Translations under genes and position numbers: made by a program | Origin: Haplodiscus bocki | Lineage: Eukaryota | Reading direction: 5' to 3' | Assembly: GCA_965655095.1 (NCBI GenBank) | Contig: OZ296658.1 | Coordinates: forward strand, 9,610,001 to 9,674,000 | DNA length: 64,000 nt | Notes under the pieces: model-generated | Seen by the model: only the letters and a program-made list of their open reading frames with translations | Told to the model about the DNA's origin: nothing | The model's database searches: none | Shown here: positions 17,201 to 58,789 of the stretch, in pieces | Layout of the letters: each line of letters starts with the position of its first letter | How positions within the stretch are numbered: position 1 is the stretch's first letter

Positions 17201-20200
17201 AATTGTCTTGCTATCTCAAAAAAGTTGCTTACAAACAGTGTTTGTGCACTTTGCGGTTTGTTCAGCGTTTGTACGTTGATGTTTCTCTCATTATCTGGTT
17301 CGATCGTATCACTATAAAGTCTATTAAAAACGATACTTGTTGCTTTATTTCTTAGCAAAGATTTATAGTCATAAGAGTGACTCCGAAGCCGAAGAAGCTT
17401 GAAGAGATCTATAAGATGTCTTTGACAGATTGAAAATTTAATCTGCCGATCTGGCAGAAGGGTTTGCTACGAGAATTGAATGAAAGTAGATGTAGTGATA
17501 GCTCAGTAAAAGTTGTTGTTTTACAAAAGAAAGAATTGAATTGAAGGTTCAATAGCAAACAACGTTTTCGTTAGTGAGAGTGAGATCAAGCGATTTCTGC
17601 AAAGCATTGACAAATTGTGGCAAAAAGAATACAGCGCGTGAACAAAACATGAAGACATGTTAAAGAATGACGTGTACCAAAATTAGATCATAACAAACTA
17701 AACGAAATTTTAGATTGACTTTCAACATTCTCCTCTCCTTGTTATGATATAAATTTCAGTTTCGAAATGTCAAGAATATCTAGAGACGTCGTCAAGCCAT
17801 CTCCACTCGAGAATTTGCAGTGCATTCGTGAGTTGCTGCATGAGTGTTCTGCAGTCTCGAGGCTGACGACGGAGGAAGTGCGTCTTCGGAGAGCTGAGCC
17901 GGCGGTCATAACCGACTTGGCTATCAACGTTGAGGGACCGTCAGGCGAGGCTCTGCTGAATGCTAGGGCAGTGGAGGACCTGCCGGAGGCGCTCTTCGAC
18001 AAGCGTGCTACCAAGAGGGTGTCCACTCCCGATCTGCCAGTGGGCATTCTAGATGACTTCTACATCAAAGAAGGTAGCGTGGCATGTGGTTGGCCCGATG
18101 GCTTCGGTCCCCTTAACTTTGGGTATGAATACTGATTAAAGTGATGAATATCTTGATAAAAGAAGAGTGTGATGAATTTCATTTTGTCGATTCTTTCAGC
18201 TACTTCGTCTTTGTTGAGGGGACCAGCTACAGACCGTGGCACTACGATCTCAGTGCATCGGAGACAGCTGGCGACACGATCGCAACTCTGCTGACTGGAA
18301 GGAAGATTTGGGTCTTTGCTCCAATGGGTCGAGCGTCAGCTGATCTCGTCAAGATCTGCGGTGCTATGAGATCGTCAAAGGCTATTGAAGAGTTCCTGCG
18401 ATATCTGGGGGCCATGTCCAGGACTCTAAAAAAGAAGCTGAGCTGGTGTGAAGTGGGGGCTGGCGAGACCATCTACATGCCGTACGGGTATGGGCACTCT
18501 GTGATCACTTTGTGTGAGGGTCGTCCTGCCTGTATGGTTTCTGTAGACGCCAGGGCAGATCCGGAGCGTGTTATCGCAGCTAACAACTCCGCCAATAACT
18601 TCACAGCAGTTGGCCACAGAAGAGAATACTGAGGTTGGTAATAAAATTTGTGGTAAACATTCGAATAAGTTGAAATGTATTTTTCTGAGAATGATAGGAA
18701 ACTTTCAAGAGTTGAGCCATGAAGAGAGAGTCATAATAAGCCATAAAGTGCGACTGTATGATGAAAAATGACTTTGGGGATACGGTTTTTATGAGTTAAA
18801 AATTCAGCGAAAATGAGGATTTTGAAGAAATAATGACTTGTAACAATGGAAGGAGTAGTCGGTAACTGAGAATACAGTTATGGAAGGTGTATCCCACTGT
18901 GGAGCATCCATTGACACCATAAAATCGACAATATCATCAAAAATGAAAGTGGGGATACGGTTTTTGTGGCTAAAAAACCGTAAAATTTCCAAAAATTCGT
19001 CAAAATTGAGGATTATTAGTCTTTTATTGATCTTGAGCTGGTAACAGGGTTCTGTCAGGTGACGCCAGATCCAAGGGCATTTTTCGTAGCTGGACGACAG
19101 GACGTATAATATCACCTTGTATTGTTTTGACTTTGACAACTCGGTTTGTTTCGTCATTGCCTTCATAAACTTCGATGATTCTGCCTTTCTTCCAATGTAA
19201 TGGTGGCTGATTATCCTCAGCAATGAGAACAAAATCTCCCACGGTTAATCTTTCACCATCCTTGAACCATCTTTTTCGAATTTGAAGGTGTACTAAATAA
19301 TCTCTTCTCCAACTTTTCCAAAATGACGAAGTTAATTTTTGAAGTAATCTGTACCGTTCATCTAGTTGTAAAGATATTGGCACATTGTGAAGCGGAAGAG
19401 CTTTTAGTGGTCCACCGACAAGAAAGTGAGCTGGTGTAAGGACTGAGGTCGTCAGGATCATTTGAAAGAGGGGTCAGAGGCCTGGAGTTCATGATGGCTT
19501 CTATTTGACAAAGATAGTTTGATAGCTCTTCATATGTCAAAACATGAGTTCCAACTGATCTTCTGAGATGATGTTTCATCCTCTTAACGGCAGCTTCCCA
19601 TAATCCACCAAAATGGGGAGCACGTGGTGGTATCATAACCCATTCTGTTCCATGTTCTGAACCGAAACTTCTGATGGATTGTTTTCCTTTTTCCAATAAG
19701 TCTTGGATCTTTAGTAGATCATTCCTCGCACCAATAAAATTTGTTGCATTGTCTGTATAAATTCTTTGAGGGACTCCTCTCCGTGAGGAGAAGCGCTGTA
19801 GAGCATTGAGACAGGCTTCCTTGGTTAACGATGAAACTAGCTCTAGATGAGTTGCTTTAACTGAGAAACAAACGAAAACAGCAATATACGTTTTGATATC
19901 TGGTTCTGTAATAATTGGTCCTGCGAAATCTAATCCCGTGTACGTGAAGGGCTTGGAGGGAGTGATTCGCTCACTGGGTAGGTCCGCCATAAGTTGAATG
20001 GGAGGTTTGGCACTGAATCTTTGACAAGTGATACAATTTTTGATATAAGAGTTGATTTGTTGTTTTCCCGAAATTGGCCAATATTCTTGACGTATCAAAT
20101 TGAGCGTGAGCTGCCCGCCCCCATGAAGGGAACCTTCATGAAAATGTCGGATAACCAATGTTGTAAAATGGCAAGTCTTCGGTAAAAGCACAGGAAATTT

Positions 20201-23200
20201 CTTGTTGTCACTGTATGTTGATTGCGAAAGTCGGCCACCAACACGAATGACATCGAATGTAGCATCCCAGAAGGGTGAGAGATTTTGAAGATGGCTCTTA
20301 GGTGGAAGAGCTTTGTTCTGCTTGAGCAAATTGTACTCTGACGAAAAGAATTCTTGTTGAAGCCTTGAAACGATGTGAAATTTGGAAATTTGAATGTCTT
20401 GAAATGAAATTGCGACTTCTGGCCTTTCATTTTTTCTGGTCTGCTTGTTAAGTAAGAATAAGAATCGATCCCTTGCTTTGTAAACGTAGGTCAGGGCATT
20501 GTACAGATGATTAAGATTGGAGAAGCGATGTGGATCAATGATAAAATCACATGATGGATTGGAAGCAACATAAGATGATGTATCGGTCCTGGGCTGTTTC
20601 TTTTGCTCTGGTGGGGAATCCAATTGTGTAGGCATCTTAGGCCATGCTGAGGAAGAATTGTGAAGCCATTTTGGGCCTGACCACCAGAGAGAACAGTCTA
20701 ATAACTCCTTGGGTGTCATTCCTCGAGTTGGAATGTCAGCAGGATTGGATGCAGTTGGAACGTGATTCCACTGTTGAGGCGAAATAATGTCTTGAATCTG
20801 CGAGATTCTGTTAGCAACGAATGTTGTCCATTTATTGGGAGGCTGAGATAGCCATTGAAGTACGATGGTCGAGTCAGACCATGCGAAGACAGTATAATTT
20901 CTAAAAGCGGTGAGTGATAACAAATCTGTTATCGTTTTAATGAGCTTTGATCCCAAAAGTGCAGCACAAAGTTCAAGTCTGGGTAGTGAGACTGTTTTGA
21001 CTGGTGCTACTCGACTTTTCGAGGCTAGAATTTTGATTGACACATTATTTTGGAGATCAACCATTCTTGAGTATACAACTGCGGCATAGGCTGTCTCTGA
21101 AGCATCTGTGAATAGATGTAATTCGAAATTTGTACAATCAGAAGGTGGAAGAATGCATCTTGGAAGTTGAATAGAGTTGAGTAAGGGCAATTCAGAGCGT
21201 AGTTGCATCCAACTACTGAGGATTTCATCAGGCAAGGTTTCATCCCACTTGGAACCAGTAGTCCAAGTTTGCTGCATTAAAATTTTGTATTTGATAACAA
21301 CTGGTGCTAACCACCCGAGAGGGTCAAATAGTTTTGAAAGATCTGACAAGAAAATTCGCTTGGTAAATGTTTGAATAGGGTCAAGATTGATTTGAAAATG
21401 GAATTCATCAAGGTTTGGTCTCCATTTGACTCCAAGAGTTTTGATATGATAATTCTTGTCAAGAACTTTGTCATCATCTGTGTTTTCGCGAAGATGTTTG
21501 GGTAATTCGAGGATTATCTCCGGCTCATTCGAGGTCCACTTGCGCAACTCGAGGCCGAATTTCTGGAGCTCTGCTGAAATGCCACGTAAAAGTGATCGTG
21601 CTTCTTGAATAGATGGAGCTCCACTGAGATAATCATCGACATAGAAGTCATTTTGAATGGATGTCGAAAAAAGCGTATCCCCACTCAGCTCGCCAATCTT
21701 TTTGAGGCAGCGAGTGGAGTGATGGGCCGAGGAGGTAATTCCGTATGTCACACGAGTCATGCGGTAATACTGTATGGGCTTGGATGTGTCATGTCGCCAT
21801 AAAATGCGGTGAAAATCTTTGTCTGCTTCATTGAGTCCAACTTGTCTGTACATCTTTGCAACATCTCCACTAATGGCAACCCTATGGAATCGAAATCGAA
21901 GCAAGGTGGAGAATAAATCGGGCTGTACAGTAGCTCCTACCATTAAAGATTCATTAAGCGATATGCCAGATTGACTCTTGGCAGAGCCGTCAAAAACTAC
22001 ACGTAATTTGGTAGTCGAAGAATCGTCTTTGAATACGCAATGGTGTGGTAAGTAGAAGACTTGATGCGGTAGCTTTTCCATAGCAGTTCCTGGTACCTTC
22101 TCCAGGTGCTCTAAATCAATAAATTCTTGTACAAAGGCTTTGTATTTTTGCTGTGTGTTCGGATTTGCTTGTAATCTTCTTTCGAGGGACAAAAATCTTC
22201 TTTTGGCTTGTTCAAAACTGTCACCTAGTTTTGGAACTTCTTGCTTGAATGGAAGTTTCACAATGAATCGACCTTCTTGATCACGTGTTGTTGTGGTTTC
22301 AAAGTGCTGTTCGCAAGCCACTTCTTCTTTGGTAAGAATGTTCTGTTTTGGAAGTTCCTCGAGCTCCCAAAATTTTCTTAAATCGAATTCTGAAGTAACA
22401 TGATAAGATTGTGTTGGTCGATTTTCTTCAGATGCGACTTGACCGGAAGCAACCCAGCCAAATTCTGTTTTGCGGAAGTACAGACCTTCAGTTGTTTTGA
22501 TTTTGTCTTGCAAAACAACTTCTTCAAATATATCTGCCCCCAGAATAATGTCAATGTTCCTTGATTTGAGATAATCTGAATCAGCTAATGGCGTAACTTC
22601 AATCGGGAGAGACTTGTGTTTGGGTTTATTGACAGCTGGCATTGTGGCAGCTAATTTGGGTAAAATCAAAGCCTTGACTTCAAATCTTTTTTCTGTATCG
22701 ATACTTGAGAGAAATTGAAATTTCGTTGATGCTGTTGGAGTTTTCTGAGTTTTGTCTCCAATTCCTGTGAGTTGGAGCATATGCTTTTGGCGCTTTAGCT
22801 TGAGCAATTGAGCACAATTTTCTGTTATAAATGAGCTTTGAGAGCCACTGTCTAGTAGGGCTCGGCAGGAAATAACTGTATTATCAGCTGAAATGACTTT
22901 GATCATAGCAGTGGGGAGGAGGGTACAAAAACCGTATCCCCACTCTGTTGAGTGATTGCTTTGCGTTTTCTCCGTTGGTTTTGCGAAGGTATCATCATGT
23001 AGCATGGTGTGGTGCTTTTTCTGGCATTTTCGACAAGTATTTTTGGACTTGCAGTCTTTTGTTTGGTGACCAAGACGTAAGCAATTGAAACACAACTTGA
23101 GAATTTTGACTTTTTCTGGTTTTTCAGCTAATGATAGATGCTTGAATTGTTCACACATAACGAGCTTGTGGTCTGCTTCACACGCTGGGCAATTTTGTGA

Positions 23201-26200
23201 ACTCGCATGATAATTTTGGATTGGTTTTTCTTGATGAATTTTCTCTTGATTCGAAGTTTTATTCGACTTACCAGCCGCTTCTAAGGCATTTGCTCGTTCT
23301 TCTAAGAACTTCTTGAGTTGATCCATCATTCGGATGTCGTCACCAGTGGAAGTAAGCTCCCATTGTCGCCGAGTCACGTAATCTAGCTTTTGTGAGATAA
23401 CTCGAACAAGGAAACAACTAAGTTGATCTTCTGTCTTGACTAATTCATCGAGAGCCATGGCATTTTCAACATAGCAACTGATTAAACTGCGAATTGATTC
23501 TGGTGATTCTTGGTTCAAAGGCTTGAAATTGAGAATTGCATCAATATGTGCACGAGAAATTAGACGCTTGTTTTCATACCTTTCTTTTAGAAGTTTCATT
23601 GCCACTTTGTAGTTTGCGCCGGTAATTGGAAGATGTGAAAGAAGTTTTGCAGGCTCATCTCTGAGACTGGCTTTGAGATAATGTAACTTTTGAATGTCGG
23701 GTAACGTGTCATTTGAATCAACTGCTCCCTTGAAAAGGTCGAGAAATGGTGTCCAGTTCTGATATTTTCCATCGAATTTTGGAAGATCAAATTTTGGTAA
23801 TTTCAAATTTGATGCAGTTCGAGAATGAACAGATTCTGTTCCATCATAATTTTCTGTAGGATTGTCAGAGCTGTTCTTGGCGACAAATTTCTCTAGTTTA
23901 AGCTGACGCATTCTGAATTCAAAGTCTTTTTCATCGATAATTTCCATTTCGGCATCAATATCGTCTTCATTGGCGGCTTGAATAATTTGATCGTTGATAA
24001 TGATAATTTCCTTGAGTTTGTCAGGAATTATTCGAAGCATCGTTTCCAGAGAAGTAAGATCGTCAGTGGTAAGATCATCTTTACCTTTTTCGAAGATAAC
24101 TTCTGCTTTCGTTGAGTTTTTGGTAAAGAAACCAAATAAATAGCCACGCTTTCTTTTGAGTTCGGATAAAGTGGCTGACATTTTGCTTTGCAGTTCGTAG
24201 ATTCCCGGGTCGCGGCACCAAATGTAGTGATAGCTCAGTAAAAGTTGTTGTTTTACAAAAGAAAGAATTGAATTGAAGGTTCAATAGCAAACAACGTTTT
24301 CGTTAGTGAGAGTGAGATCAAGCGATTTCTGCAAAGCATTGACAAATTGTGGCAAAAAGAATACAGCGCGTGAACAAAACATGAAGACATGTTAAAGAAT
24401 GACGTGTACCAAAATTAGATCAAAACAAACTAAACGAAATTTTAGATTGACTTTCAACAGTAGATACCCGTTATCTCGAAGGAAGACGAATTAGTTCACT
24501 CTTTAATCACTACGCCAGACTGTCATGGATCGATTTGCGAAGTGTGCAGGAAATAACTATATAGACCTTAAGCAAGCTTAATGCTTAAAAATAATCAATA
24601 GGTCTTAAGCTAATCGCTTAATGCCTAAAATTGTGTTTACATGGAACGACTTGAGAATTTTTGGAACTAAATTGAATTGTTTGACGAAATTATGCCATTT
24701 GGCACAGTAATCCCAGCATTTCCGCCGCATTCAACGAAGAGCATTTTCGGTGAATGAGCAATAATGGCGGTTAATCGACTGCTTGCTTGGATCATTTTCA
24801 TCAATTATAAGTGGGAAAAAGTGCACCTCAATCTAAAACTAACGAAAGGTCTATAATTTGGGACTTCTGTCAGTTCATAAGAAGGCAGAGTCTCGTACAA
24901 CAGCGCCCGTACTGCTTCGTGATTGGACACACAACTTTCTTTTTGATTGGCTGCCGAAGTTTCAGAGTTTGACGACGAACGCACGACTTGCTCGAGTTGC
25001 ACGTAGAACTCAGCAGGCGACTTAACGTGAGTTACAGTTCCGAGGTACTCGCAGTCATTGCGAAGAGTGATTTCTGGGATGTTGCAGTGTCGGGTCCATT
25101 CGGCTGATGCTTCGGAAAGAATGATGTCATTTGTTTCAAACAACAATTCTGTCATCGTTCCTTGATCGTCTATAAAAACAAAGTCATAAAGGAGATAAGC
25201 ATAACTAAAAAGAGAAGTTGCTCAATTCCTCTTCAAAATGTATGATAAATTTAAACCACCCGGGAACGGCCCAAATCGACGGCACCCGTAAGACGTAAAA
25301 TATCCATGAAAGGTTTTTTTTTGGAAAAATTGTGATCTTTTCGCCGAAAAAATTGGTAATATCAAGTTTTCTTTCACGTTTAAATTTTGTCGTGGGGCGC
25401 CAAAAATTTAGTAGATGTACTCGTTGCTACAATACAAAACTTATTGAGAAAGTCATTAGTTCAAACATTTTTGGTCTATGAATTTCTGGTAAATATAAAG
25501 GGGTATCACAAAAACTTTGGCCCGAAGGCCCGAAATGATTTCGTACATATAAGGTTGCTTTCGCGTTCCTGGCCTGTAGTTTTGAACCTAATGAGTGCAT
25601 GAAAATTTTCTACGAAATTATTCCGAGAACAAAACTTCTGAAAAAATCCGGATCACTCAGCATCCACCCGAAATTGACTAGCGAGAATAAACTAGAAAGA
25701 ACCAGAACATAAATCGATGGAGGAAACTGAAAACAATCCTCTCGAAATTATTTTTCAGTCTTTTTCACCAACCCATTTCAACTTCAATATCCACCCAGTT
25801 ATAGACAACTCTGAGTGCTCGGTATGTTGGATCGTTATCGGTAAGTCCGATGCCAATATACTCCAAAATTGTCGCTATTTTCGATTCATCCGGGACTACC
25901 TGAAACATGCAAATTACATACATACAAAGTCTTTCCAAGATTTCTTGCTCTTATCTAAAGGACAATGATAGAAATTCCAAAGTCGCATGATTCAAAAATG
26001 AGAAACTTGGGGAAAAAGATGAATGGAAAGTTTTGCCCATGGAAAGATAAAGTTCTTTAAAAAACATTTTGCAAACCGCAGTCTAATTTCATAAGCTCCA
26101 AAAAGTTTTCACAGCCAAAATAGTTTTCTTCGCATTTTTACCACTTTCGCATGAGCATGACAAAATAGCCAAACGTAGGCTCTAAGGTGTTTAGCGCAAG

Positions 26201-53200: not shown

Positions 53201-56200
53201 CTTCCTGGGAAAATTTTCTTCCTCAGTCGTAAGAACTCATCTCGTAGCTCAGCGCTTAAATGAAACATGTCCGGTTGGAAACTGAAATGGTTAAAAATTG
53301 ATGCATTATCCGAAATAGTTTACCAAGTGCTTAAACCAGTTGTTGAAATATGTAACACCGATAACACTTTTCACAGTTGGCGAACTTTCTTAAGTAAGCA
53401 TAAAATTGGTGTTGTCTTAGTCGACCTTGCATGCAAGTTTTACATGTTGCATGGAAAACTTTGTAAAAGTTCCCTGCAGCAGTCAAATTCTCATGCATAT
53501 AAAATTTTACAAGCATCATGTGTGTGAAGACTATTCTCTAGCCAATCGTGACTTCAACTGATAATCATTGCATAATTACGCAATTAATTAACTACATAGC
53601 CCGAGGCATGGTCAGATGTATGTTATGCAACACGTCACATCCTCCCGAGGCATGGTCAGATGTATTTTATGCAACACGTCACATCCTCCCATCTTTAAAA
53701 TAGCATCAATGGTAAAATAATTAGCATCATTAAAATATAGCAACATTGGCAATAGTCCCATTAACAAAGAGCAAGACTGAGTTTGTTTGGAGCTTTCACT
53801 ATATGTCCGGATCTGGTGCGCTTAGGCGCCTTCTCCTCCGCTGTAGACAGACGAGGTTCTGGCCGCACCGTTCGACTGAGTTGCGGGACCAGAGCGTCAC
53901 TCCCGGAGACTCGCGCCGGCGAAACAGGGGGTTTCTTGGTCTTGCTTGTAGCCGTTGGGTACTAAGCTGATGTAGCCGTGACCGTCGGACACCCCTCGGC
54001 AACCTCAGGATGACACTCTTTGTCAGATGGTGCTGGAGCAAGGTGGCGCGTATTTAAATATTATGTGCTCTTTGGTGTGCGGATTTCAGCGAGCTGCGGC
54101 GAAAGTAAATCCGTCACCAAACCCTTATCTTTCACGAGTGGATGTTTTCTTGACCAGAACAAAGTTGCGAATAAACACTTTTGAGCCTCGTTGAATTTTA
54201 CCTTTGTTCATCGTAAAATCTGCATCGTTTGGAAGAAGTTTGAGGTCTGAATCGGCAAAATAACGACGACGAAAACGAAAAAACAAATCGTGAGGCGATG
54301 ATCCAGTTGACTCACAGACACGAAAACGAAGGATGAACAATGCTTCTCCCAGACACTGCTCCCAATCTATCGAGTCTAAACCGTTTTCCTTGAGAATGCG
54401 TGCGATCAATCGCTGTAGTTCGCCGTTGTATCGTTCGTTCTGACCGTTACCTGCAGGATTGTACTTTGAAGAATGAGAAATTTCGACTCCACATACGTCC
54501 AGAAACTGTTGGATATCTGTGTTCATGAAAGCCTTTCCGCGATCTGAGTGAACTTTGTTAGGCAATCCAAACCGTGCAAATACCTGATTGGAAAGCACGT
54601 CGATCACCGTCTCCGAATCCGGATGCTCAACAACAAATGCCTCCCAAATACATGCTGTATTCGTCCAGAACTGTTAGGATCCATTTCATCTCTCCAGACC
54701 GTGTTGCTTTCGGGTCGATGAAATCCAATGACAATCGCTCCAATGGTTGAGTGCGAGTCACCAATGTTCCGTCTTCTGGCTTCTCAAAACGAGGTCTTGT
54801 TTCAGCGCAGACACCGCACGACTCGATGTGATGTTCTACGTCTTATCGCAAGTTGACCCAGTAGAAGCCTTCGCGGATGAGCTGCAGAGTTGCCTGAATA
54901 CCAAGATGACCAAACTTGTTGTGCGTTCTCTCCAGAACTGCTAGACGAAGAGACCTTGGGCACAACACTCGTACGTTATCAGACTCGACTAGGCACAATA
55001 CTCCTTGAAGTACTTGCATTCGTTTTCGGTTAGACCACAAACCAAGCGAAATTTCGGCTGGTCTGAGCTGATTTTCGAGAGAACTGCGTAGCGTTGATAA
55101 TTCGTTATCCTCTTCTTGAGCTTGACGGAACAACTCAATTGTGAACAAAGACTCAACTGATTGCAGAGCAAATGCGCGGGAGAAAGCATCCGCTCCCAGA
55201 TTTTCCTTCCCCGGTTTATACGCAATTCTGAAGTTATACTCAGACAACTCCGTTCGCCATCTGATCAGCTTGTTGTTCTCGCACGTTGACTTCACTGAAC
55301 TTGAGAAAAGAAATGAAAGCGCGCGTTGGTCAGTGTATAAGACAAATGGACGTCCAAGCAAGAACTGTCTGAACTTGCTAGCACAGTAAACAATAGCTAG
55401 AGCTTCAAGCTCAACTGCAGACCACGACTGCTTGGCGGTTGATAAACGCTTACTGGCTACTGCAACAGGAAGACCGTGCTGAGTCAGAACCCCCGCTATC
55501 GCTATTCCGCTTGCGTCCGTCTCCAACACGAACTCTTGATTGAAATCTGGAACAGTGAGAAACGAGTCCAAGATGGCTGCTTTCACTGCGCGAAACGTAT
55601 CAGCAAGTCTGCTGCTCCACTGAAACTGGCCACTGTTCTTCAAGTCTTGGAGTGGAGATGCCAACTCAGCGAACCTGGATAAAACTTGGAGCAATAATTT
55701 GCCATACCTAAGAAACGTTCGAGTTCCTTCATGTTCGTGGGTTCTTTGTACTCCTTGAGTGACTTTGTACGGTCAGGATCCGGCTTAAACGTACCCTCGC
55801 TGATCACGTATCCAAGCCAATTCAGCTCGCTTTGACCGAACGAACATTTCTTACTATTAAGAGATACATTGACCTCACGGCATCGCTGCAAGAAAGCATG
55901 AAGGTTTGCGTTGTACTCTTCAATCGTGTTGCCACAAATCACGATGTCGTCAAGATAGATGAAGACACCAGGAATGTCATCGAAGCACATTACCATTATC
56001 CGTTGGAAATTCGGCACTGCGTTGAGAACTCCAAAGCAAAGGCGAGTGTACCGAAGTAACTTACCCAATGCTTCGGACGCCGTATTTTCCATGTCTTCCT
56101 TCACTAATGGCAATTGATGGTAGGCCTGGGTAATGTCGACAACCGAAAAGTATTTGTACTTTCCCACCTTCTGTATTAAATCTGAAATCAGTGGCAACGA

Positions 56201-58789
56201 GAAAGCGTCCCGCTTCCCGAACTTATTCACCGTGCAGCTGTAATCCACGGTCATGCGCTTGCCTCCACCGCGTTTGCTTACGATGACTGGTTGCGACCTC
56301 CACTGTGAACGGGATTCTTCAACGATTCCATTCTCGAGCAACGACTTCACAGTTTTTCTAATCACCTCTTGATCCTTTGGCGTGAAGGTGATCGTATTGG
56401 TACCGCATCGTCTGTCAAATCGATGATGGGTTCCGGTTCGATTTTGAGATTGCTGTCCTTTAAACTCTTGTCGAACACGTCTTCATACTCCTTGAGTATC
56501 TCCGCGACGCCGGCCATCTCGCTGTGAGCTGCTAACACAAGATGAGGGCCGCTGTCAGACGTTTTCAATGTTACCTGAGAAAAGTTAGAGAGCGAATCCC
56601 TACCCAGGATTGCCCCGAAGCTCAAATTCTCAATTACGCGGACTGGAACAGTGAATGAATGACCTGAGATACTCAACGAACAGTTTACACGCCCAACTTC
56701 TACCAACTCTGAGCCAGTGGCAGACTTCAGCGTGTCAGACCCAGTTACCTGTAACCATTGCAATCCAAGTTCTTGTGCGCACTTCAACGACAGCAACGTT
56801 GAGGGTGATCCAGAATCAACTAGCCATCGCACATTCCTCCCATCGATGGTGCCATGCAGCAGCTTTGGAGCACCTGCTTGCGTGCTAGCAAAACCAACTA
56901 GGGAGTCGAGACGAACTACCTCATCAGCAACAACTCCAGCGACGTGCGTTTTGGCGCCTTGGCTTGTGCCTCGCATATTGCTATAACCAACCTTGGATGT
57001 ACTGCTCTTGCACACTGCCGCGAAGTGATTAGGCTTGTCACACTTCTTGCATTTCTTACCCCAAGCTGTGCAATCCTCCTTCGAACGGTGCTTTTGATTT
57101 CTGCCACAGTACTTGCAGATAAAGGTTGACGATGCTGGACCAGTCTTCTGTGTCCGTGGGGTAGGTTTGTTACGTTTCAATGCAAACGTACCTGAGTCAG
57201 TGCTGCCGACCTGTGACATACCCCCCTGCTCGCAGACGCTCGTCTCCAGTTGTTTCGCTCGCTTTAGCACATTTCCTAAAATCTCTGTGTCGGCCATCAA
57301 AAGTAGCTCCTGGCAGATGCGCGGCTCGCGGATTGCCGAGATGAGCTGCTGCTTGACCTCCGCGTCGACTTGCCCTCCGAAGTCGCACTGCTGTGCCGCA
57401 AACGTAGAGACGTCCTACCCCGTCTCCTGCCGCAGCTTCCTGAAGTTGTAGACTGCGTACGTCTTCGAGAAGCGCTCGCCGTAGTAGGTCTCCAACGCTT
57501 TTATTGCTTCTGCGTAGGTAGTACCAGAATTCAGCGTCGTTAAGATCTCGTAGCATTTTGGCGTAATGTTGGCCAAGAGAACTGCACGTTTTTCAGCGTC
57601 TTCGTGTTGCATAGTTACTGGCAACCATGTAATTCTCGAACACCTGACGCCAAAGCTTCCAATTAACAGTCTTGTCATCGGGATTGAACTGCGCGGGTGG
57701 CTTAATGTGATGTCGAAGAACAGTATCAGGCATCACTGAATGAAGTAACCAAAATTCTAGTGCTAGAATCAACGAATTTTGCTGTTGCAAGTGCTGATCT
57801 CCCCACAAGTCGTCGTGGTGCCAAGATGAACTGAAGCAAGAATCGCCAGAAAGTTACCCCGTGTACCACACAATAGCAATCCCAACACAATATCGTTGGA
57901 AAGGGCTTGAATCAGGCTAGCCCCCGAAATATTTTTCAATAAGACCGGTTCAGTCTTCGAGAAGTTATTAGCTTCCAAAGTTAGGCTGACGTTCTGACTG
58001 AACGTCCCTCACTGCAGCGTAATGCTCGTAGTGCTGCACTGCCGCGACTCTAATCTTGCTGACTGAACCAAATGTGAAGACTATTCTCTAGCCAATCGTG
58101 AATTCAACTGATAATCATTGCATAATTACGCAATTAATTAACTACATAGCCCGAGGCATGGTCAGATGTATGTTATGCAACACGTCACATCCTCCCGAGG
58201 CATGGACAGATGTATGTTATGCAACACGTCACAATGTGAAAACTGCAAGTGTCAGGCAACTTTGAAAAACATGCAAAACTTTATGCAAGCTTGACTAGGG
58301 AACGAATATGATATTGAGTAGAAATATGAAGTTATAGTTGAAAATGTTGGCGATTTGCTAAGTTTCAAATAAGTTTTTTCGTGACGTACGAAAGGTTCCG
58401 CTCCACACATTTTCGAAAGTTTAGGCCATCCATCAGCGTTTATTATTCAAACTTTCTGGGCCTCTATATTCAAATTAGATAGAATGGCTCTTGAACAGCT
58501 AAAATATTGGCACTCTTTAATTGTTTTAAGCAGAGCTGATGAAAAACTTTCAATATAACACTCGCCACTACCAGCCACTCACTTCAGTCGTCGATTTTTC
58601 GATGTATTGCAAATGCAGTTTGTCCATTTCAAAGTTGCCATCATCAACCCAGTTTGCATTCCGACGATTGGAAAATTCTGCATTTCCCCGGGACGTTCCA
58701 CGGTAGCTTCCTTTTCCTCCATCTTTGAAAGAATGTTGGTTGAACATGGCCTCTTGCGAAGAGGGAGACATCAGCTCCGTGTCTGTCAT
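2261..58789 (-). CDS. Multi-exon host gene: RRM + two extended Tudor domains + C-terminal coiled coil (Vreteno/Veneno/TDRD10-like), ~1058 aa
   Basis: Hand-spliced exons in transcription order, all GT-AG and phase-consistent: 58583-58789, 46793-46884, 38273-38392, 34590-34766, 33876-34050, 33278-33422, 32513-32639, 31634-31828, 30834-31039, 28590-28864, 25773-25899, 24844-25169, 12484-12656, 11100-11338, 10080-10229, 5219-5302, 2900-3103, 2261-2415 (sum 3177 nt incl. TAA). RRM: KLHLQYIEKSTTEEEFADY...DWWFCFQKFNTAEEAETVRQFLRNREFKGKRIKAMYA. Tudor 1: LLESPKNIILQL...PQPGRVCLAK...FKRAV...KVELIDSGEIVEV. Tudor 2: VTHVKSPAEFYVQL...ELVCVKIDNRWLRAQV...VEVFCVDHGYSATV...AQAIKVSL. Coiled coil: YVEALQEEIAQLKEKVEKLESQMEEM. 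Some splice sites (12484, 11338, 10080) are less certain. Confidence 0.8.
9085..9620 (+). repeat. Dispersed ~0.5-kb repeat family A (other copies ~4350-4640, 5395-5810, 30150-30720, 38850-39600, 40990-41530, fragment 58980-59040)
   Basis: Shared ACAGAGGCGAAG.GGAACTTCGC head, TCGAATTGAGACAAGTAC and TCAATC..GTTTTTT.AGGTTACGCCATTTT cores, CATTCTTCCTTTCAGTC tail. Confidence 0.8.
10790..10859 (-). pseudogene. tRNA-like remnant (pseudo-tRNA or SINE head)
   Basis: GGCAAAATAGTGTACTGGTAACACGTCTGCTTGCAATAATAAAGCATGGGGATCGATTCCTGCCATGTCC: A-box- and B-box-like motifs, broken stems. Confidence 0.45.
13137..17335 (+). mobile_element. Decayed BEL/Pao retrotransposon (pol remnant, gag deleted) between diverged LTR-like repeats
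   Basis: Broken frames with Pao motifs: DQIRSWYDME, NNYFSALVQL, FQMDD, NPADTGTQG, NGIDYF, KCLTTRAVHFEV, NPPGAPHHGDVWERL. PPT-like GCCCGGAGGA then TGTT at 17003; 13137-13405 resembles 17061-17330. Confidence 0.85.
17491..17727 (-). repeat. 3' LTR of BEL/Pao element
   Basis: 237 bp, immediately preceded on the minus strand by a polypurine tract. Confidence 0.97.
17728..17740 (-). promoter_or_regulatory. Polypurine tract of BEL/Pao element
   Basis: AAGGAGAGGAGAA abutting the TG of the 3' LTR. Confidence 0.9.
17767..18632 (+). CDS. JmjC-domain Fe(II)/2-oxoglutarate dioxygenase, 2 exons (17767-18122, 18200-18632), 262 aa, inside the retrotransposon
   Basis: A 77-nt intron GTATGA...TTCTTTCAG (18123-18199) joins the two ORFs in frame (..PLNFG|YFVFVEG..). 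Motifs: RPWHYD (H133, D135), TLLTGRKIWVFAP (K154), CEVGAGETIYMPYGYGHSVITL (H218), matching the JmjC consensus HxD...GxKxW...GexlfiPxGxxHxV. Exons are visibly more GC-rich than the intron and flanks. Confidence 0.9.
18640..18645 (+). terminator. Polyadenylation signal of JmjC gene
   Basis: AATAAA 7 nt after the TGA stop. Confidence 0.6.
19024..24181 (-). CDS. BEL/Pao gag-pol polyprotein (gag, 3 Cys/His knuckles, protease, RT, RNase H, integrase); one frameshift near 19445
   Basis: 1607-aa ORF: KLPKFDLPKFDG gag motif; CPACEADH/CFNCLRLGH/CRKCQKKHH knuckles; ALLDSGSQ protease; FYVDDYL RT; FTDASE RNase H; GLDFAGP...YTDNATNF...GLWEAAVK integrase. The C-terminal tail (VLTPAHFLVG...RPVVQL) continues in ORF 19024-19461. 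Confidence 0.95.
24203..24220 (-). promoter_or_regulatory. Primer binding site (tRNA-His/Phe-like)
   Basis: TGGTGCCGCGACCCGGGA, 2 nt inside the 5' LTR. Resembles the complement of tRNA-His or tRNA-Phe 3' ends; the isoacceptor is not resolvable without the host tRNA set. Confidence 0.85.
24223..24459 (-). repeat. 5' LTR of BEL/Pao element
   Basis: 237 bp direct repeat of 17491-17727, followed on the minus strand by TT then the PBS. Confidence 0.97.
29372..29800 (+). repeat. Dispersed repeat family C (other copies ~29860-30100, ~34820-35330)
   Basis: Shared ACAAGA.G.C.GGCTAC..C..G.ATA.T.TC.GC..TCCAA head and GGATGATT.TCCTTCCATATT...ATA.GG.CG.AAA tail. Confidence 0.7.
36990..37380 (+). repeat. 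Dispersed repeat family B with internal tRNA-like segment (other copies ~7810-8090, fragment 28410-28500)
   Basis: Shared AAGAATACTGATTCTCAAG..GAATGTCA...TAGAGCAT.CGAC...CTCTTTGATCAAAATCT.GGAACAAAT.CGAG.TGTGAACGGATC. Confidence 0.7.
39620..40800. mobile_element. Foldback/MITE-like element with long imperfect inverted arms
   Basis: Nested inverted matches: GACCCCATTTTTGG/CCAAAAATGGGGGTC; GGTGCCGAAAATGCAATTTACATG/CATGTAAATTGACATTTCGGCACC; TATAGGCGTAAAC/GTTCACGCCTATA; GAGTCAAACGTTTT/AAAACATTTGACTC. Confidence 0.7.
42725..46120 (+). mobile_element. Decayed BEL/Pao remnant (gag with knuckles, integrase fragment) between diverged ~245-bp direct repeats
   Basis: FEWPEWSGQF, KTLVTGRAKAA, PMKDGDHKIWKC/CFCC/CGKDGC knuckles, FQNIGIDYFGPFEVK...CLFTC; 42725-42970 resembles 45875-46120. 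ORFs 43058-43735 and 43880-44470 are probably its gag N-terminus. Confidence 0.75.
47331..48279 (+). mobile_element. Internally deleted hAT DNA transposon (949 bp)
   Basis: 11-bp TIRs TAGGGCAACCC / GGGTTGCCCTA; 8-bp TSD GTGAGACG (47323-47330, 48280-48287); subterminal GGGCCAAA arrays at both ends. Confidence 0.93.
47624..48115 (+). CDS. 163-aa truncated hAT transposase: BED-like zinc finger fused to C-terminal dimerisation domain
   Basis: YCKLCKTKVSC...IHRSGHVH (C2H2 BED-like) and SSASIERSFSKLGKLLAEDRNF (hAT C-terminal ERxFS motif); most of the catalytic core is missing. Confidence 0.75.
   Translation: MGRQGLCTSDKIDTFTSKYPREFEKRKLLGEFVLYCKLCKTKVSCDKKIRVEIHRSGHVHQREIGQLQLTPVVNFFIPNTTTKFDDPIRTYLVNRLENMQDLMDIISCTTGLSPEKTAKLRGAVGSSASIERSFSKLGKLLAEDRNFDAKNVEAYICVYCNNL
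47762..51365. repeat. 1802-bp tandem duplication (47762-49563 / 49564-51365)
   Basis: The ORF track repeats at a 1802-bp offset; one substitution seen (~48824 vs ~50626); junction microhomology CGA(C/A)AA. Confidence 0.95.
53523..58233 (-). mobile_element. Ty3/Gypsy LTR retrotransposon (Mag/K02A2.6-like)
   Basis: 161-bp TG...CA LTRs 53523-53683 and 58073-58233 (3 mismatches seen); TSD ATGTG; PBS-like TGGTTCAGTCAGC (58058-58070); PPT AAAGATGGGAGGA (53684-53696). Confidence 0.95.
54125..57733 (-). pseudogene. Gypsy gag-pol split by several frameshifts/stops
   Basis: Order gag (NWKLWRQVFENY; CKYC..H..C and CKKCDKPNHFAAVC), PR (WLVDSGS), RT (IYLDDIVI), RNase H (LETDASG), IN (HSDRGKAF...GQNERYN) across at least six ORF fragments. 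Confidence 0.9.

What the first reader, a model, noticed from the sequence alone, without database searches (positions are those of the whole stretch)
17767..18632. BEL/Pao retrotransposon carries an intact antisense JmjC dioxygenase gene: candidate transposon-encoded demethylase / anti-silencing system
Seen: the gene lies strictly inside the element, between the pol stop (19024) and the PPT/3' LTR (17740), bounded by near-identical LTRs and a GTAGA TSD, so it very probably moved with the element. After splicing it is an uninterrupted 262-aa ORF with H133-x-D135...H218, the 2-OG-binding Lys in GRKIW, and a downstream AATAAA. Established: JmjC enzymes demethylate or hydroxylate Lys/Arg on histones and other proteins; the GxKxW form occurs in KDM2/KDM7 and JMJD4/6/8-type enzymes; the extra ORF described for BEL/Pao elements is usually an env-like glycoprotein. 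I do not know of a JmjC-bearing BEL/Pao family. Inference: a stand-alone, divergent JmjC used by the element to erase repressive marks (H3K9me/H3K27me) on its own copies or to modify silencing proteins, by analogy to the VANDAL VANC anti-silencing proteins. The substrate is unknown.
Basis: partly seen in the sequence, partly recalled or inferred. Interest (0 to 1): 0.93.

Follow-up and report, generated by a model that had tools for sequence, protein, structure and literature searches.

The report
Retrotransposon family carrying JmjC oxygenase gene
A young BEL/Pao retrotransposon of an unidentified invertebrate carries, on its opposite strand, an intact and selectively conserved gene for a JmjC-type oxygenase that most resembles histone demethylases; several related element lineages carry it too, so mobile DNA may bring its own tool against chromatin silencing.

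Summary
Window 17491-24459 is a BEL/Pao LTR retrotransposon on the minus strand, with 237-bp LTRs (1 mismatch) and a GTAGA target duplication. Between the pol stop and the polypurine tract lies a plus-strand two-exon gene (17767-18122, 18200-18632) encoding 262 aa.

The 77-nt intron sits at the same position and phase in four element lineages. The protein is a divergent JmjC Fe(II)/2-oxoglutarate oxygenase:
- A family profile hits PHF8, KDM7A and PHF2 at E=1e-9 to 1e-5.
- The AlphaFold model (pLDDT 89) matches PHF8, PHF2, KDM7 and KDM2A first.
- H133, D135, K154 and H218 are conserved in 25-29 of 29 family representatives.

Five insertions with different target duplications all carry the gene. 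It is found in at least six BEL/Pao lineages and one Ty3/Gypsy-type element, from several samples. dN/dS is 0.1-0.3. No canonical host JmjC came up at E<1e-3, and no paper describing the combination was found.

That it acts as a histone demethylase against silencing remains inference. The substrate, the transcript and the host species are unknown.

The parts
17486..17490 (.). Target-site duplication GTAGA, low side
   Evidence: Same 5 bases flank the other LTR at 24460-24464
17491..17727 (-). 3' LTR of the element (237 bp, TG..CA)
   Evidence: Direct repeat with 24223-24459, 1 mismatch
17728..17741 (-). Polypurine tract (read on the minus strand), abutting the 3' LTR
   Evidence: Read from sequence; conserved in L003, L014 and L018
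17750..17759 (+). Pyrimidine-rich ...TTTCAG, a 3' splice acceptor-like site 7 nt upstream of the cargo ATG
   Evidence: A polypyrimidine-CAG lies 6-9 nt before the ATG in six lineages: window, L003, L014, L007, L008, L015. Its use (trans-splicing or a 5'UTR intron) is inferred.
17767..18122 (+). Cargo gene exon 1 (codons 1-118 plus 2 nt of codon 119)
   Evidence: ORF; homologues P0003-P0006; dN/dS 0.29 against L018 at dS 0.36
18123..18199 (+). Intron, 77 nt, GT..AG, phase 2, antisense to the element's RNA
   Evidence: Same position and phase in L003 (71 nt), L014 (81 nt) and L007 (60 nt). Intron sequence diverged while exons are conserved.
18200..18632 (+). Cargo gene exon 2 with stop; holds the JmjC double-stranded beta-helix core with H133, D135, K154, H218
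   Evidence: Profile hits to PHF8/KDM7A/PHF2/JMJD6; AF2 pLDDT 88.9 and Foldseek top hits to JmjC demethylases; residue conservation
18640..18645 (+). AATAAA polyadenylation-like signal, 8 nt after the stop
   Evidence: Read from sequence; AATAAA or AATAAT is at a similar distance in L014 and L003
18633..19023 (.). Spacer between the cargo stop and the pol stop. Holds two 52-nt direct repeats (18751-18802, 18926-18977), each with the motif GGGGATACGGTTTTT.
19024..24181 (-). gag-pol of a BEL/Pao element (DUF1759, protease, RT, Peptidase_A17, integrase, DUF5641). Broken once, by one frameshift.
   Evidence: Pfam; relatives L003 and L006 read through continuously
24207..24220 (-). Primer-binding-site-like stretch starting TGG, 2 nt after the 5' LTR
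   Evidence: Read from sequence; conserved next to the LTR in L003, L005, L006, L014 and L015
24223..24459 (-). 5' LTR
24460..24464 (.). Target-site duplication GTAGA, high side

Best explanation
Shown: the 262-aa gene is an accessory gene of the retrotransposon itself. It sits inside the LTRs between pol and the polypurine tract, on the opposite strand, and has been copied together with the element. It has been kept open and under purifying selection while the element lineages diverged about as far as their pol genes. It encodes a JmjC-fold protein with a complete Fe(II)/2-oxoglutarate site (His-x-Asp...His plus Lys).

Inferred: because the gene and its intron are antisense, the intron is not removed from the element's genomic RNA. 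Each new DNA copy therefore inherits an intron-bearing gene. That gene would be transcribed inward from the 3' LTR side and processed at the conserved acceptor just before the ATG. The enzyme would be an active oxygenase. As its nearest relatives are PHF8, KDM7, PHF2 and KDM2, it most likely removes repressive histone lysine methylation (H3K9me2, H3K27me2 or H4K20me1 type marks), or modifies a silencing protein. That would keep copies of the element transcribable against small-RNA-guided heterochromatin.
For: Position inside the element and mobility with it:
- TSDs are GTAGA (window), GGTGC (L005), ATATT (L006), GGTAC (L003) and GGCAA (L015), and all five insertions carry the cargo.
- There are at least 11 sequence variants, 96-100% identical, on at least 12 contigs.

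Spread across lineages:
- The cargo is present in BEL/Pao lineages P0002, P0007, P0008, P0012 and P0022, and in a Ty3/Gypsy-type element (P0031).

Selection:
- dN/dS is 0.08-0.19 between lineages, with dS saturated.
- dN/dS is 0.29 at dS 0.36 for exon 1 against L018.
- Cargo identity is 57-61% where pol identity is 58-66%.

Fold and active site:
- PDB profile hits: PHF8 E=1.7e-9, KDM7A 2e-6, PHF2 7e-6, JMJD6 about 1e-4 to 1e-3.
- The AF2 model has pLDDT 88.9; Foldseek top hits are PHF8, PHF2, KDM7A, ceKDM7A, KDM4A and KDM2A.
- Among 29 representatives, H133 is kept in 25, D135 in 25, K154 in 29 and H218 in 27.

Gene structure:
- The intron is shared by four lineages.
- The acceptor before the ATG is shared by six lineages.
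Against: - No expression data, no activity data and no substrate are available.
- Single sequences stay below Pfam's JmjC cut-off (12-22.6 bits against 24).
- There is no reader domain (PHD, CXXC, Tudor) that would direct it to histones.
- The column aligned with a 2-oxoglutarate-contacting Thr of PHF8 holds Arg in 21 of 29 members, so cofactor contacts differ.
- JmjC hydroxylases (JMJD6, TYW5, JMJD5) also appear among the hits.
- The antisense mRNA would be complementary to the genomic RNA, which could feed RNA interference rather than oppose it.
- The full-length window protein itself could not be submitted to the fold and family tools. Its exons were tested apart, with relative P0008 as a proxy (pLDDT 70.9).
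Confidence: 0.45

Rival explanations
1. The cargo is an active JmjC oxygenase, but a hydroxylase or demethylase of a non-histone target. Candidates are a host silencing or translation factor, the element's own Gag or integrase, or RNA, as with JMJD6, JMJD5, JMJD7, FIH or TYW5. It would help replication in some way other than erasing histone marks.
For: - JMJD6 is hit at E about 1e-4 to 1e-3 by the family profile.
- TYW5 and JMJD5 appear in the fold search of the full-length relative.
- The protein is small (262 aa) and has no chromatin reader domain, like the stand-alone hydroxylases.
- The 2-oxoglutarate contacts differ from those of PHF8.
Against: In both the sequence-profile and the fold searches, the top ranks are consistently lysine demethylases of the PHF8/KDM7/PHF2/KDM2 group, ahead of the hydroxylases.
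Confidence: 0.27
2. The protein opposes silencing without catalysis, by binding heterochromatin proteins or nucleosomes. This is what has been proposed for the fission-yeast JmjC protein Epe1 (PMC7192584).
For: - Epe1 is a JmjC protein with an anti-silencing role described as non-enzymatic (PMC7192584, listed).
- A C-terminal G-x-R-R motif is conserved in most BEL/Pao-borne members.
- The 2-oxoglutarate contacts are unusual.
Against: The metal triad and the Lys are kept in 25-29 of 29 representatives over deep divergence. That is what is expected if catalysis is selected.
Confidence: 0.1
3. The antisense gene serves the element in another way: as a self-limiting regulator, or through its transcript. 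The antisense RNA pairing with genomic RNA would yield small RNAs, with the protein secondary. This has been discussed for plant antisense ORFs (PMC7264820).
For: - The cargo mRNA would be fully complementary to the 3' part of the genomic RNA (read from the sequence).
- Plant LTR elements have antisense ORFs between pol and the 3' LTR whose role is unknown.
Against: Selection acts on the amino-acid sequence (dN/dS 0.1-0.3) and on the catalytic residues. An RNA-only role would not require that.
Confidence: 0.08
4. The gene is a passenger: a host gene fragment captured by chance, or a secondary insertion in this copy only, with no function for the element.
For: LTR elements do sometimes transduce host sequence (PMC7264820). 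One sister copy (L005) has one frameshift in the cargo.
Against: - The gene is at the same place in every lineage examined, and it has no terminal repeats or target duplication of its own.
- dN/dS is low.
- No canonical host JmjC protein scored E<1e-3 among 1.84 billion representatives; only 29 clusters did, and most of the contexts recovered were retroelements.
- L005 is broken throughout (10 indel events relative to the window copy), so its cargo frameshift reflects general decay or assembly error.
Confidence: 0.03

Closest known systems
PHF8 / KDM7A (KIAA1718) / PHF2 / C. elegans KDM7A, and KDM2A (JHDM1-type JmjC histone lysine demethylases)
   Same: They are the best sequence-profile and fold matches. 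His-x-Asp, the Lys after Gly, and the distal His align with the corresponding PHF8 segments.
   Different: - Identity is only 10-20%.
- There is no PHD finger or other reader domain.
- The protein is 262 aa, against 900 aa or more (my own knowledge).
- Arg replaces the Thr three residues before the first His.
- The gene is encoded by a retrotransposon, not a host gene.
- No canonical KDM scored E<1e-3 in the representative search.
JMJD6, JMJD5, TYW5 (small JmjC hydroxylases)
   Same: They are stand-alone JmjC domains of similar size. They gave weaker but significant profile and fold hits.
   Different: They rank lower than the KDM7 group. Their substrates are proteins or tRNA rather than methyl-lysine.
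Antisense additional ORFs between pol and the 3' LTR of plant LTR retrotransposons (Grande gene23, RIRE2, Retand; PMC7264820)
   Same: They have the same position and orientation in the element, and an own promoter is presumed.
   Different: The plant ORFs have no recognisable protein family and their function is unknown. Here the ORF is a recognisable enzyme, has a conserved intron, and sits in animal BEL/Pao and Gypsy-type elements.
AlkB-type 2-oxoglutarate dioxygenase ORF in Phalaenopsis Ty3/Gypsy elements (PMC9289625)
   Same: This is an LTR retrotransposon that fixed a Fe(II)/2-oxoglutarate oxygenase acting as an 'eraser' of a methyl mark, proposed to counter host surveillance.
   Different: It is a different oxygenase family (AlkB, an RNA m6A demethylase), it is found in plants, and it is confined to one lineage.
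VANDAL21 VANC anti-silencing protein (Arabidopsis Mutator-like DNA transposon); TET/JBP genes linked to KDZ transposons of fungi (both from my own knowledge)
   Same: The concept is the same: a transposon-encoded factor that reverses the epigenetic silencing of its own family.
   Different: There is no sequence or fold relation. VANC is not an enzyme. TET/JBP enzymes act on DNA bases. Both involve DNA transposons of plants or fungi.
Epe1 of fission yeast (PMC7192584)
   Same: It is a JmjC protein that counteracts H3K9-methyl heterochromatin.
   Different: It is a host gene, and its action is reported as non-enzymatic. Homology was not tested here.
env-like third ORFs of BEL/Pao elements (Roo; mosquito BEL/Pao with chuvirus-like glycoprotein; PMC13524379), and ORF3 diversity in bdelloid LTR elements (PMC5408684)
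   Same: They are accessory genes downstream of pol, and the same accessory gene can be shared between BEL/Pao and Gypsy elements.
   Different: They are sense-strand glycoproteins, esterases or nucleases. None is a JmjC protein (0 occurrences in these papers).
JmjC proteins of large DNA viruses (Leptopilina boulardi filamentous virus JmjC protein; mimivirus L613)
   Same: They are virus-encoded JmjC/cupin folds, found as the best viral fold matches.
   Different: E-values are 1e-5 to 5e-4 at 12-19% identity, these are DNA viruses, and no relation beyond the fold was seen.

Membership tests
JmjC-domain Fe(II)/2-oxoglutarate oxygenases | Double-stranded beta-helix (JmjC/cupin) fold | tested here: met
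   The AF2 model of exon 2 has pLDDT 88.9 and pTM 0.80. All 50 listed Foldseek PDB matches are JmjC-type 2-oxoglutarate oxygenases, nearly all of them histone demethylases, starting with PHF8 at E=3.8e-6 and query-normalised TM 0.57-0.62. The full-length relative P0008 gives the same result.
JmjC-domain Fe(II)/2-oxoglutarate oxygenases | His-x-Asp/Glu...His metal triad | tested here: met
   H133, D135 and H218 are present and align with the PHF8 triad segments. They are kept in 25, 25 and 27 of 29 family representatives.
JmjC-domain Fe(II)/2-oxoglutarate oxygenases | Lys that binds the C5 carboxylate of 2-oxoglutarate, on the strand after the HxD strand | tested here: met
   K154 in GRKIW is invariant in 29 of 29 and aligns with the Lys of PHF8 'GEK'. 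Its role in 2-oxoglutarate binding is taken from knowledge of the family.
JmjC-domain Fe(II)/2-oxoglutarate oxygenases | Significant match to curated family models | tested here: inconclusive
   Single sequences fall below Pfam's cut-off. Window exon 2 scores JmjC 12.4 bits and Cupin_8 15.1; the best family member scores 22.6 bits against 24. A profile of the family is significant against solved JmjC proteins (E=1.7e-9).
JmjC-domain Fe(II)/2-oxoglutarate oxygenases | 2-oxoglutarate-dependent catalysis | not testable with these tools
   No biochemical data are available.
KDM7/PHF8/PHF2 (JHDM1-type) histone demethylase subfamily | Closest sequence and structural neighbours | tested here: met
   This group ranks top.
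KDM7/PHF8/PHF2 (JHDM1-type) histone demethylase subfamily | N-terminal PHD finger reader joined to the JmjC domain | tested here: not met
   Exon 1 (118 aa) has no Pfam hit at E<=10. The whole protein is 262 aa, and no member of the family shows a PHD domain.
KDM7/PHF8/PHF2 (JHDM1-type) histone demethylase subfamily | Orthology-level similarity to canonical members | tested here: not met
   An exhaustive HMMER search of 1.84 billion representatives gave 29 hits at E<1e-3, and none carried a recognisable canonical KDM7 or KDM2. Identity to PHF8 is about 18%. It is a separate family that resembles this subfamily.
BEL/Pao LTR retrotransposons | gag-pol with DUF1759, Pao peptidase A17, RT, integrase and DUF5641 | tested here: met
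   Peptidase_A17 E=3.4e-49, DUF1759 3.4e-34, DUF5641 3.8e-29.
BEL/Pao LTR retrotransposons | LTRs with TG..CA ends, short target duplication, PBS and PPT | tested here: met
Transposon-encoded anti-silencing factors (VANC-like, functional class) | Loss of repressive marks on the element's own family when the factor is expressed | not testable with these tools
   This is a functional analogy only. No chromatin or expression data were at hand.

The most novel reading that the evidence does not exclude
Animal LTR retrotransposons of two superfamilies (BEL/Pao and Ty3/Gypsy-type) share an old, mobile, intron-bearing antisense gene for a histone lysine demethylase. They use it as a counter-defence that erases the H3K9/H3K27 methylation laid down by small-RNA-guided silencing. 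This would be the first enzyme of the chromatin 'eraser' class known to be encoded by a retroelement.
Probability: 0.35. Interest if true: 0.9.

Novelty: new variant of a known kind. Interest (0 to 1): 0.78.

Why it matters
Hosts silence retrotransposons largely through histone and DNA methylation guided by small RNAs. Known element-borne counter-measures are few: VANC in a plant DNA transposon, and an AlkB RNA demethylase in orchid Gypsy elements.

Several things here suggest that retroelements can carry a chromatin- or protein-modifying eraser enzyme as standard equipment:
- A JmjC oxygenase gene has been kept under selection in many BEL/Pao lineages and in a Gypsy-type element of invertebrates.
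- The nearest solved relatives of the protein are the H3K9/H3K27/H4K20 demethylases.

If that holds, the question 'can transposons actively undo heterochromatin in animals?' can be addressed with a defined gene. The antisense, intron-bearing layout is also a natural counterpart of the antisense-intron design used in engineered reporters. It shows how a spliced gene can ride on a retroelement without losing its intron.

Tried and rejected
Searches that gave nothing or too little:
- Pfam on the two exons separately gave only sub-threshold Cupin_8/JmjC hits for exon 2 and nothing for exon 1.
- phmmer of exon 2 against PDB sequences gave only chance-level cupin hits, E about 1.
- The scan of JGI metagenome contigs failed twice. 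Alignment A4 was too divergent to derive patterns, and A3 patterns found no relative.
- Rfam and tRNA scans of the window found nothing.

Host identification:
- The larger window ORFs are all transposon-derived or unassignable.
- A NOP2 exon next to relative L003 is about 50% identical to rotifer, nematode, flatworm and tick proteins alike.
- The assembly accession of P0022 was not found in any paper.
- The host remains an unidentified metazoan. Neighbouring contigs carry Cys-loop receptor, SNF transporter and HMG-CoA synthase genes.

Readings rejected:
- A secondary insertion or one-copy passenger is contradicted.
- A recent capture of a host JmjC gene is contradicted.
- A TATA-like TATAAA at 17746-17751 is not conserved in relatives, so it is not proposed as the promoter.
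Full report
1. THE OBSERVATION

The window holds a complete LTR retrotransposon on the minus strand.
- Two 237-bp direct repeats (17491-17727 and 24223-24459) differ at one base. They start TG and end CA, and are flanked by the same five bases, GTAGA (17486-17490 and 24460-24464).
- Next to the 5' LTR is a TGG... primer-binding-like stretch (24207-24220). Next to the 3' LTR is a polypurine tract (17728-17741).
- The internal gag-pol region (19024-24181, minus strand) has the BEL/Pao domain set: DUF1759, aspartyl protease, RVT_1, Peptidase_A17 (E=3.4e-49), Integrase_H2C2 and DUF5641.
- gag-pol is broken once, by one frameshift. Relatives read through continuously.

Between the pol stop and the polypurine tract lies a plus-strand gene.
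- The ATG is at 17767 and exon 1 runs to 18122. A GT..AG intron of 77 nt spans 18123-18199. Exon 2 is 18200-18632.
- Joined as they stand, the exons give 789 nt and 262 codons without an internal stop.
The only correction is the LTR/PPT boundary, which is 17727/17728.

2. THE INTRON IS REAL AND SHARED

Three other element lineages have a GT..AG intron at the same codon position and phase. The intron sequence is diverged and of different length, while the flanking exons are conserved.
- L003/L004/L001: 71 nt.
- L014: 81 nt.
- L007: 60 nt, in frame, and therefore read through in the database protein P0008.

A more distant clade (P0015, P0022, P0036) has continuous coding sequence there.

Because relatives share the intron, I joined the exons to test the splice model, and only inside scripts. 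The gene is antisense to the element's RNA, so the intron cannot be spliced out of the genomic RNA. It is therefore inherited by every new copy. This follows from the geometry, not from a measurement.

3. THE GENE TRAVELS WITH THE ELEMENT

In the assembly that holds the window's protein (ERZ26859043) there are further copies.
- L005 is full length and 98.9% identical. Its TSD is GGTGC. It has many breaks (10 indel events relative to the window copy), including one frameshift in the cargo.
- L006 is 99.5% identical and has a large internal deletion of gag-pol. Its TSD is ATATT and its cargo is intact at 262 aa.
- The 90%-identity cluster of the exon 2 ORF has 11 sequence variants, 96-100% identical, on at least 12 contigs.

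Diverged lineages carry it at the same place and on the same strand.
- P0002: L001-L004, cargo 263 aa and intact in three copies; the L003 insertion has TSD GGTAC.
- P0007: L014, cargo 257 aa and intact.
- P0012/P0036: L015, TSD GGCAA.
- P0008: L007, with the pol C-terminus antisense just downstream.
- P0022: L008, from NCBI assembly GCA_013332895.1.
- P0004: L018.

These are documented.

Two more contexts differ. P0025 lies next to a degraded BEL/Pao gag. P0031 lies antisense inside a 13.5-kb element whose pol has the Ty3/Gypsy domain set and whose LTRs enclose it (L016).

The cargo is therefore not a secondary insertion in one copy. It is standard equipment of a group of elements, and it has apparently been exchanged between LTR superfamilies.

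4. SELECTION

Nei-Gojobori dN/dS between lineages is 0.105 (window and L003), 0.19 (window and L014) and 0.08 (L003 and L014). Synonymous sites are saturated (dS 1.9-4.6), so these values only show that dN/dS is far below 1.

An unsaturated pair is available for exon 1, which is the less conserved half. Window against L018 gives dS 0.36, dN 0.10 and dN/dS 0.29.

Cargo protein identity (57-61%) is like that of pol (58-66%) for the same pairs. This fits long co-descent rather than recent capture.

5. WHAT THE PROTEIN IS

Single-sequence tests are weak.
- Pfam Cupin_8 gives E=0.023 and JmjC E=0.23 for exon 2.
- The best family member scores 22.6 bits against a cut-off of 24.
- phmmer against PDB sequences gives nothing significant.

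An exhaustive HMMER search of 1.84 billion representative proteins found 29 clusters at E<1e-3. None of those inspected is named, almost all are short ORFs from environmental assemblies, and none carried a recognisable canonical JmjC protein.

A profile of these sequences is clearly significant against solved structures.
- PHF8: E=1.7e-9 to 1.8e-8.
- KDM7A: 1e-7 to 2e-6.
- PHF2: 7e-6.
- JMJD6: 8e-5 to 1e-3.
- C. elegans KDM7A: 3e-4.
- KDM2A: 0.03.

In that alignment His-x-Asp, the Lys after Gly, and the distal His align with the corresponding PHF8 segments.

AlphaFold2 gives a confident model for exon 2 with the family alignment: pLDDT 88.9, pTM 0.80, with the strands of a double-stranded beta-helix. 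Foldseek against the PDB returns PHF8, PHF2, KDM7A, ceKDM7A, KDM4A and KDM2A first (E=4e-6 to 1e-4, query TM 0.5-0.62).

The full-length relative P0008 is used as a proxy; its sequence includes the read-through intron. It gives pLDDT 70.9, with a poorly defined stretch at residues 75-134. It returns the same families, plus TYW5 and JMJD5 lower down.

Among the 29 representatives, H133 is kept in 25, D135 in 25, K154 in 29 and H218 in 27.

Two differences from PHF8/KDM7 stand out.
- There is no reader domain.
- An Arg (21 of 29) sits at the column that aligns with the Thr three residues before the first His of PHF8.

It is a JmjC oxygenase by fold and active site. It is a family of its own that resembles, but does not belong to, the KDM7/PHF8 subfamily.

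6. HOW IT IS PROBABLY EXPRESSED (INFERENCE)

The ATG is 39 nt from the inner edge of the 3' LTR, so transcription must start in or beyond the LTR, reading inward.

A polypyrimidine-CAG acceptor-like site lies 6-9 nt before the ATG in six lineages. This suggests either trans-splicing of a leader or a 5'UTR intron whose first exon lies in the LTR. A TATA-like sequence in the window copy is not conserved.

Poly(A)-like signals follow the stop within about 10-30 nt.

7. HOW IT MOST LIKELY WORKS

Shown: a mobile, conserved, catalytically complete JmjC gene.

Inferred: it is an active oxygenase. Since its nearest relatives remove H3K9me2, H3K27me2, H4K20me1 or H3K36me2 (established knowledge of those enzymes), it most likely erases repressive lysine methylation on chromatin of its own copies, or on a silencing factor. 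I put this at about 0.45.

Rivals are:
- a hydroxylase or demethylase of a non-histone target (0.27);
- a non-catalytic Epe1-like anti-silencer (0.10);
- a regulatory role of the antisense transcript (0.08);
- a neutral passenger (0.03).

One cost argues that the protein pays for itself. Its mRNA is complementary to the genomic RNA and could feed RNA interference.

8. COMPARISON WITH WHAT IS KNOWN

Described third ORFs of BEL/Pao elements are env-like glycoproteins, some of them shared with Gypsy elements (PMC13524379). Bdelloid LTR elements carry diverse ORF3s, none of them JmjC (PMC5408684).

Plant LTR elements have antisense ORFs between pol and the 3' LTR, without any recognisable family (PMC7264820). 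Orchid Gypsy elements fixed an AlkB-type RNA demethylase (PMC9289625).

No paper in the library combines BEL/Pao with JmjC, and broader searches found no retroelement-borne JmjC gene. Viral JmjC-fold proteins exist in large DNA viruses.

I therefore rate this as a new variant of a known kind: accessory genes of LTR retroelements, and transposon-borne counter-silencing factors.

9. LIMITS
- The host is unidentified.
- All relatives come from unannotated environmental or draft assemblies, and HiFi homopolymer errors may account for some frameshifts.
- The window's full-length spliced protein could not be given to the family, PDB or fold tools for lack of a reference, so its exons were tested apart.
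- The slips are disclosed under 'tried and rejected'.

Noticed in passing
window 18776-18790 (+), 18951-18965 (+), 21668-21682 (-), 22927-22941 (-); L003, L004, L014, L005, L006 at matching places: The 15-nt motif GGGGATACGGTTTTT occurs four times in the element and nowhere else in the 64 kb (0.01 expected by chance). Two copies lie in the spacer after the cargo on the plus strand. Two lie inside the pol coding sequence on the minus strand. Lineages L003 (GGGGGTGCACTTTTT) and L014 (GGGGAGACACTTTTT) have the same layout with their own version of the motif. The four copies therefore co-vary within a lineage. In the genomic RNA the pol copies could pair with the spacer copies over 15-21 bp. This is a candidate long-range RNA interaction or a site for a lineage-specific factor. 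It is absent in L015.
   Followed up: partly
L016 4906-18381 (sample ERZ25071359): This is a 13.5-kb Ty3/Gypsy-type element: its pol has RVT_1, RT_RNaseH, Integrase_H2C2 and rve, and its LTRs are about 404 bp. It carries a JmjC-like ORF (JmjC E=4e-4, Cupin_8 3e-4) antisense after pol. Two further sense ORFs of 425 and 311 aa, with no Pfam match, lie between the JmjC-like ORF and the 3' LTR.
   Followed up: partly
window 17750-17759; L003, L014, L007, L008, L015 upstream of the cargo ATG: A splice-acceptor-like polypyrimidine-CAG is conserved 6-9 nt before the start codon. It could be a trans-splice site or the end of a 5'UTR intron.
   Followed up: partly
L003 and L014 just after the cargo stop; window 18632-18638: A donor-like GTGAGT follows the stop codon directly in L003 and 9 nt after it in L014; the window has a weaker GGTTGGT. 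A 3'UTR intron is possible.
   Followed up: no
C-terminus of the cargo protein (window 18600-18629) and alignment A4: A short basic motif, G-x-R-R, near the C-terminus is kept in most BEL/Pao-borne members despite low overall identity. Its role is unknown.
   Followed up: no
L001/L002 and L014: Elements occur as head-to-tail arrays sharing an LTR (start-to-start spacing 6452 and 6884 bp), each unit with its own cargo copy. One unit in L001 has the 5' part of cargo exon 1 replaced by unrelated sequence.
   Followed up: no
window 54125-57300 (-): This is a fragmented Ty3/Gypsy-type pol in several ORFs (protease, RVT_1, RT_RNaseH, Integrase_H2C2), in the most G+C-rich part of the window (0.46-0.49). 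It has no JmjC-like ORF nearby. Elsewhere in the window there are an rve fragment and a hAT dimerisation fragment.
   Followed up: partly
database protein P0001 (exon 2 ORF): The stored protein ends ...REYWGW, so the gene caller read the TGA stop at 18630-18632 as Trp. This is an artefact of an alternative genetic code applied to this contig.
   Followed up: no
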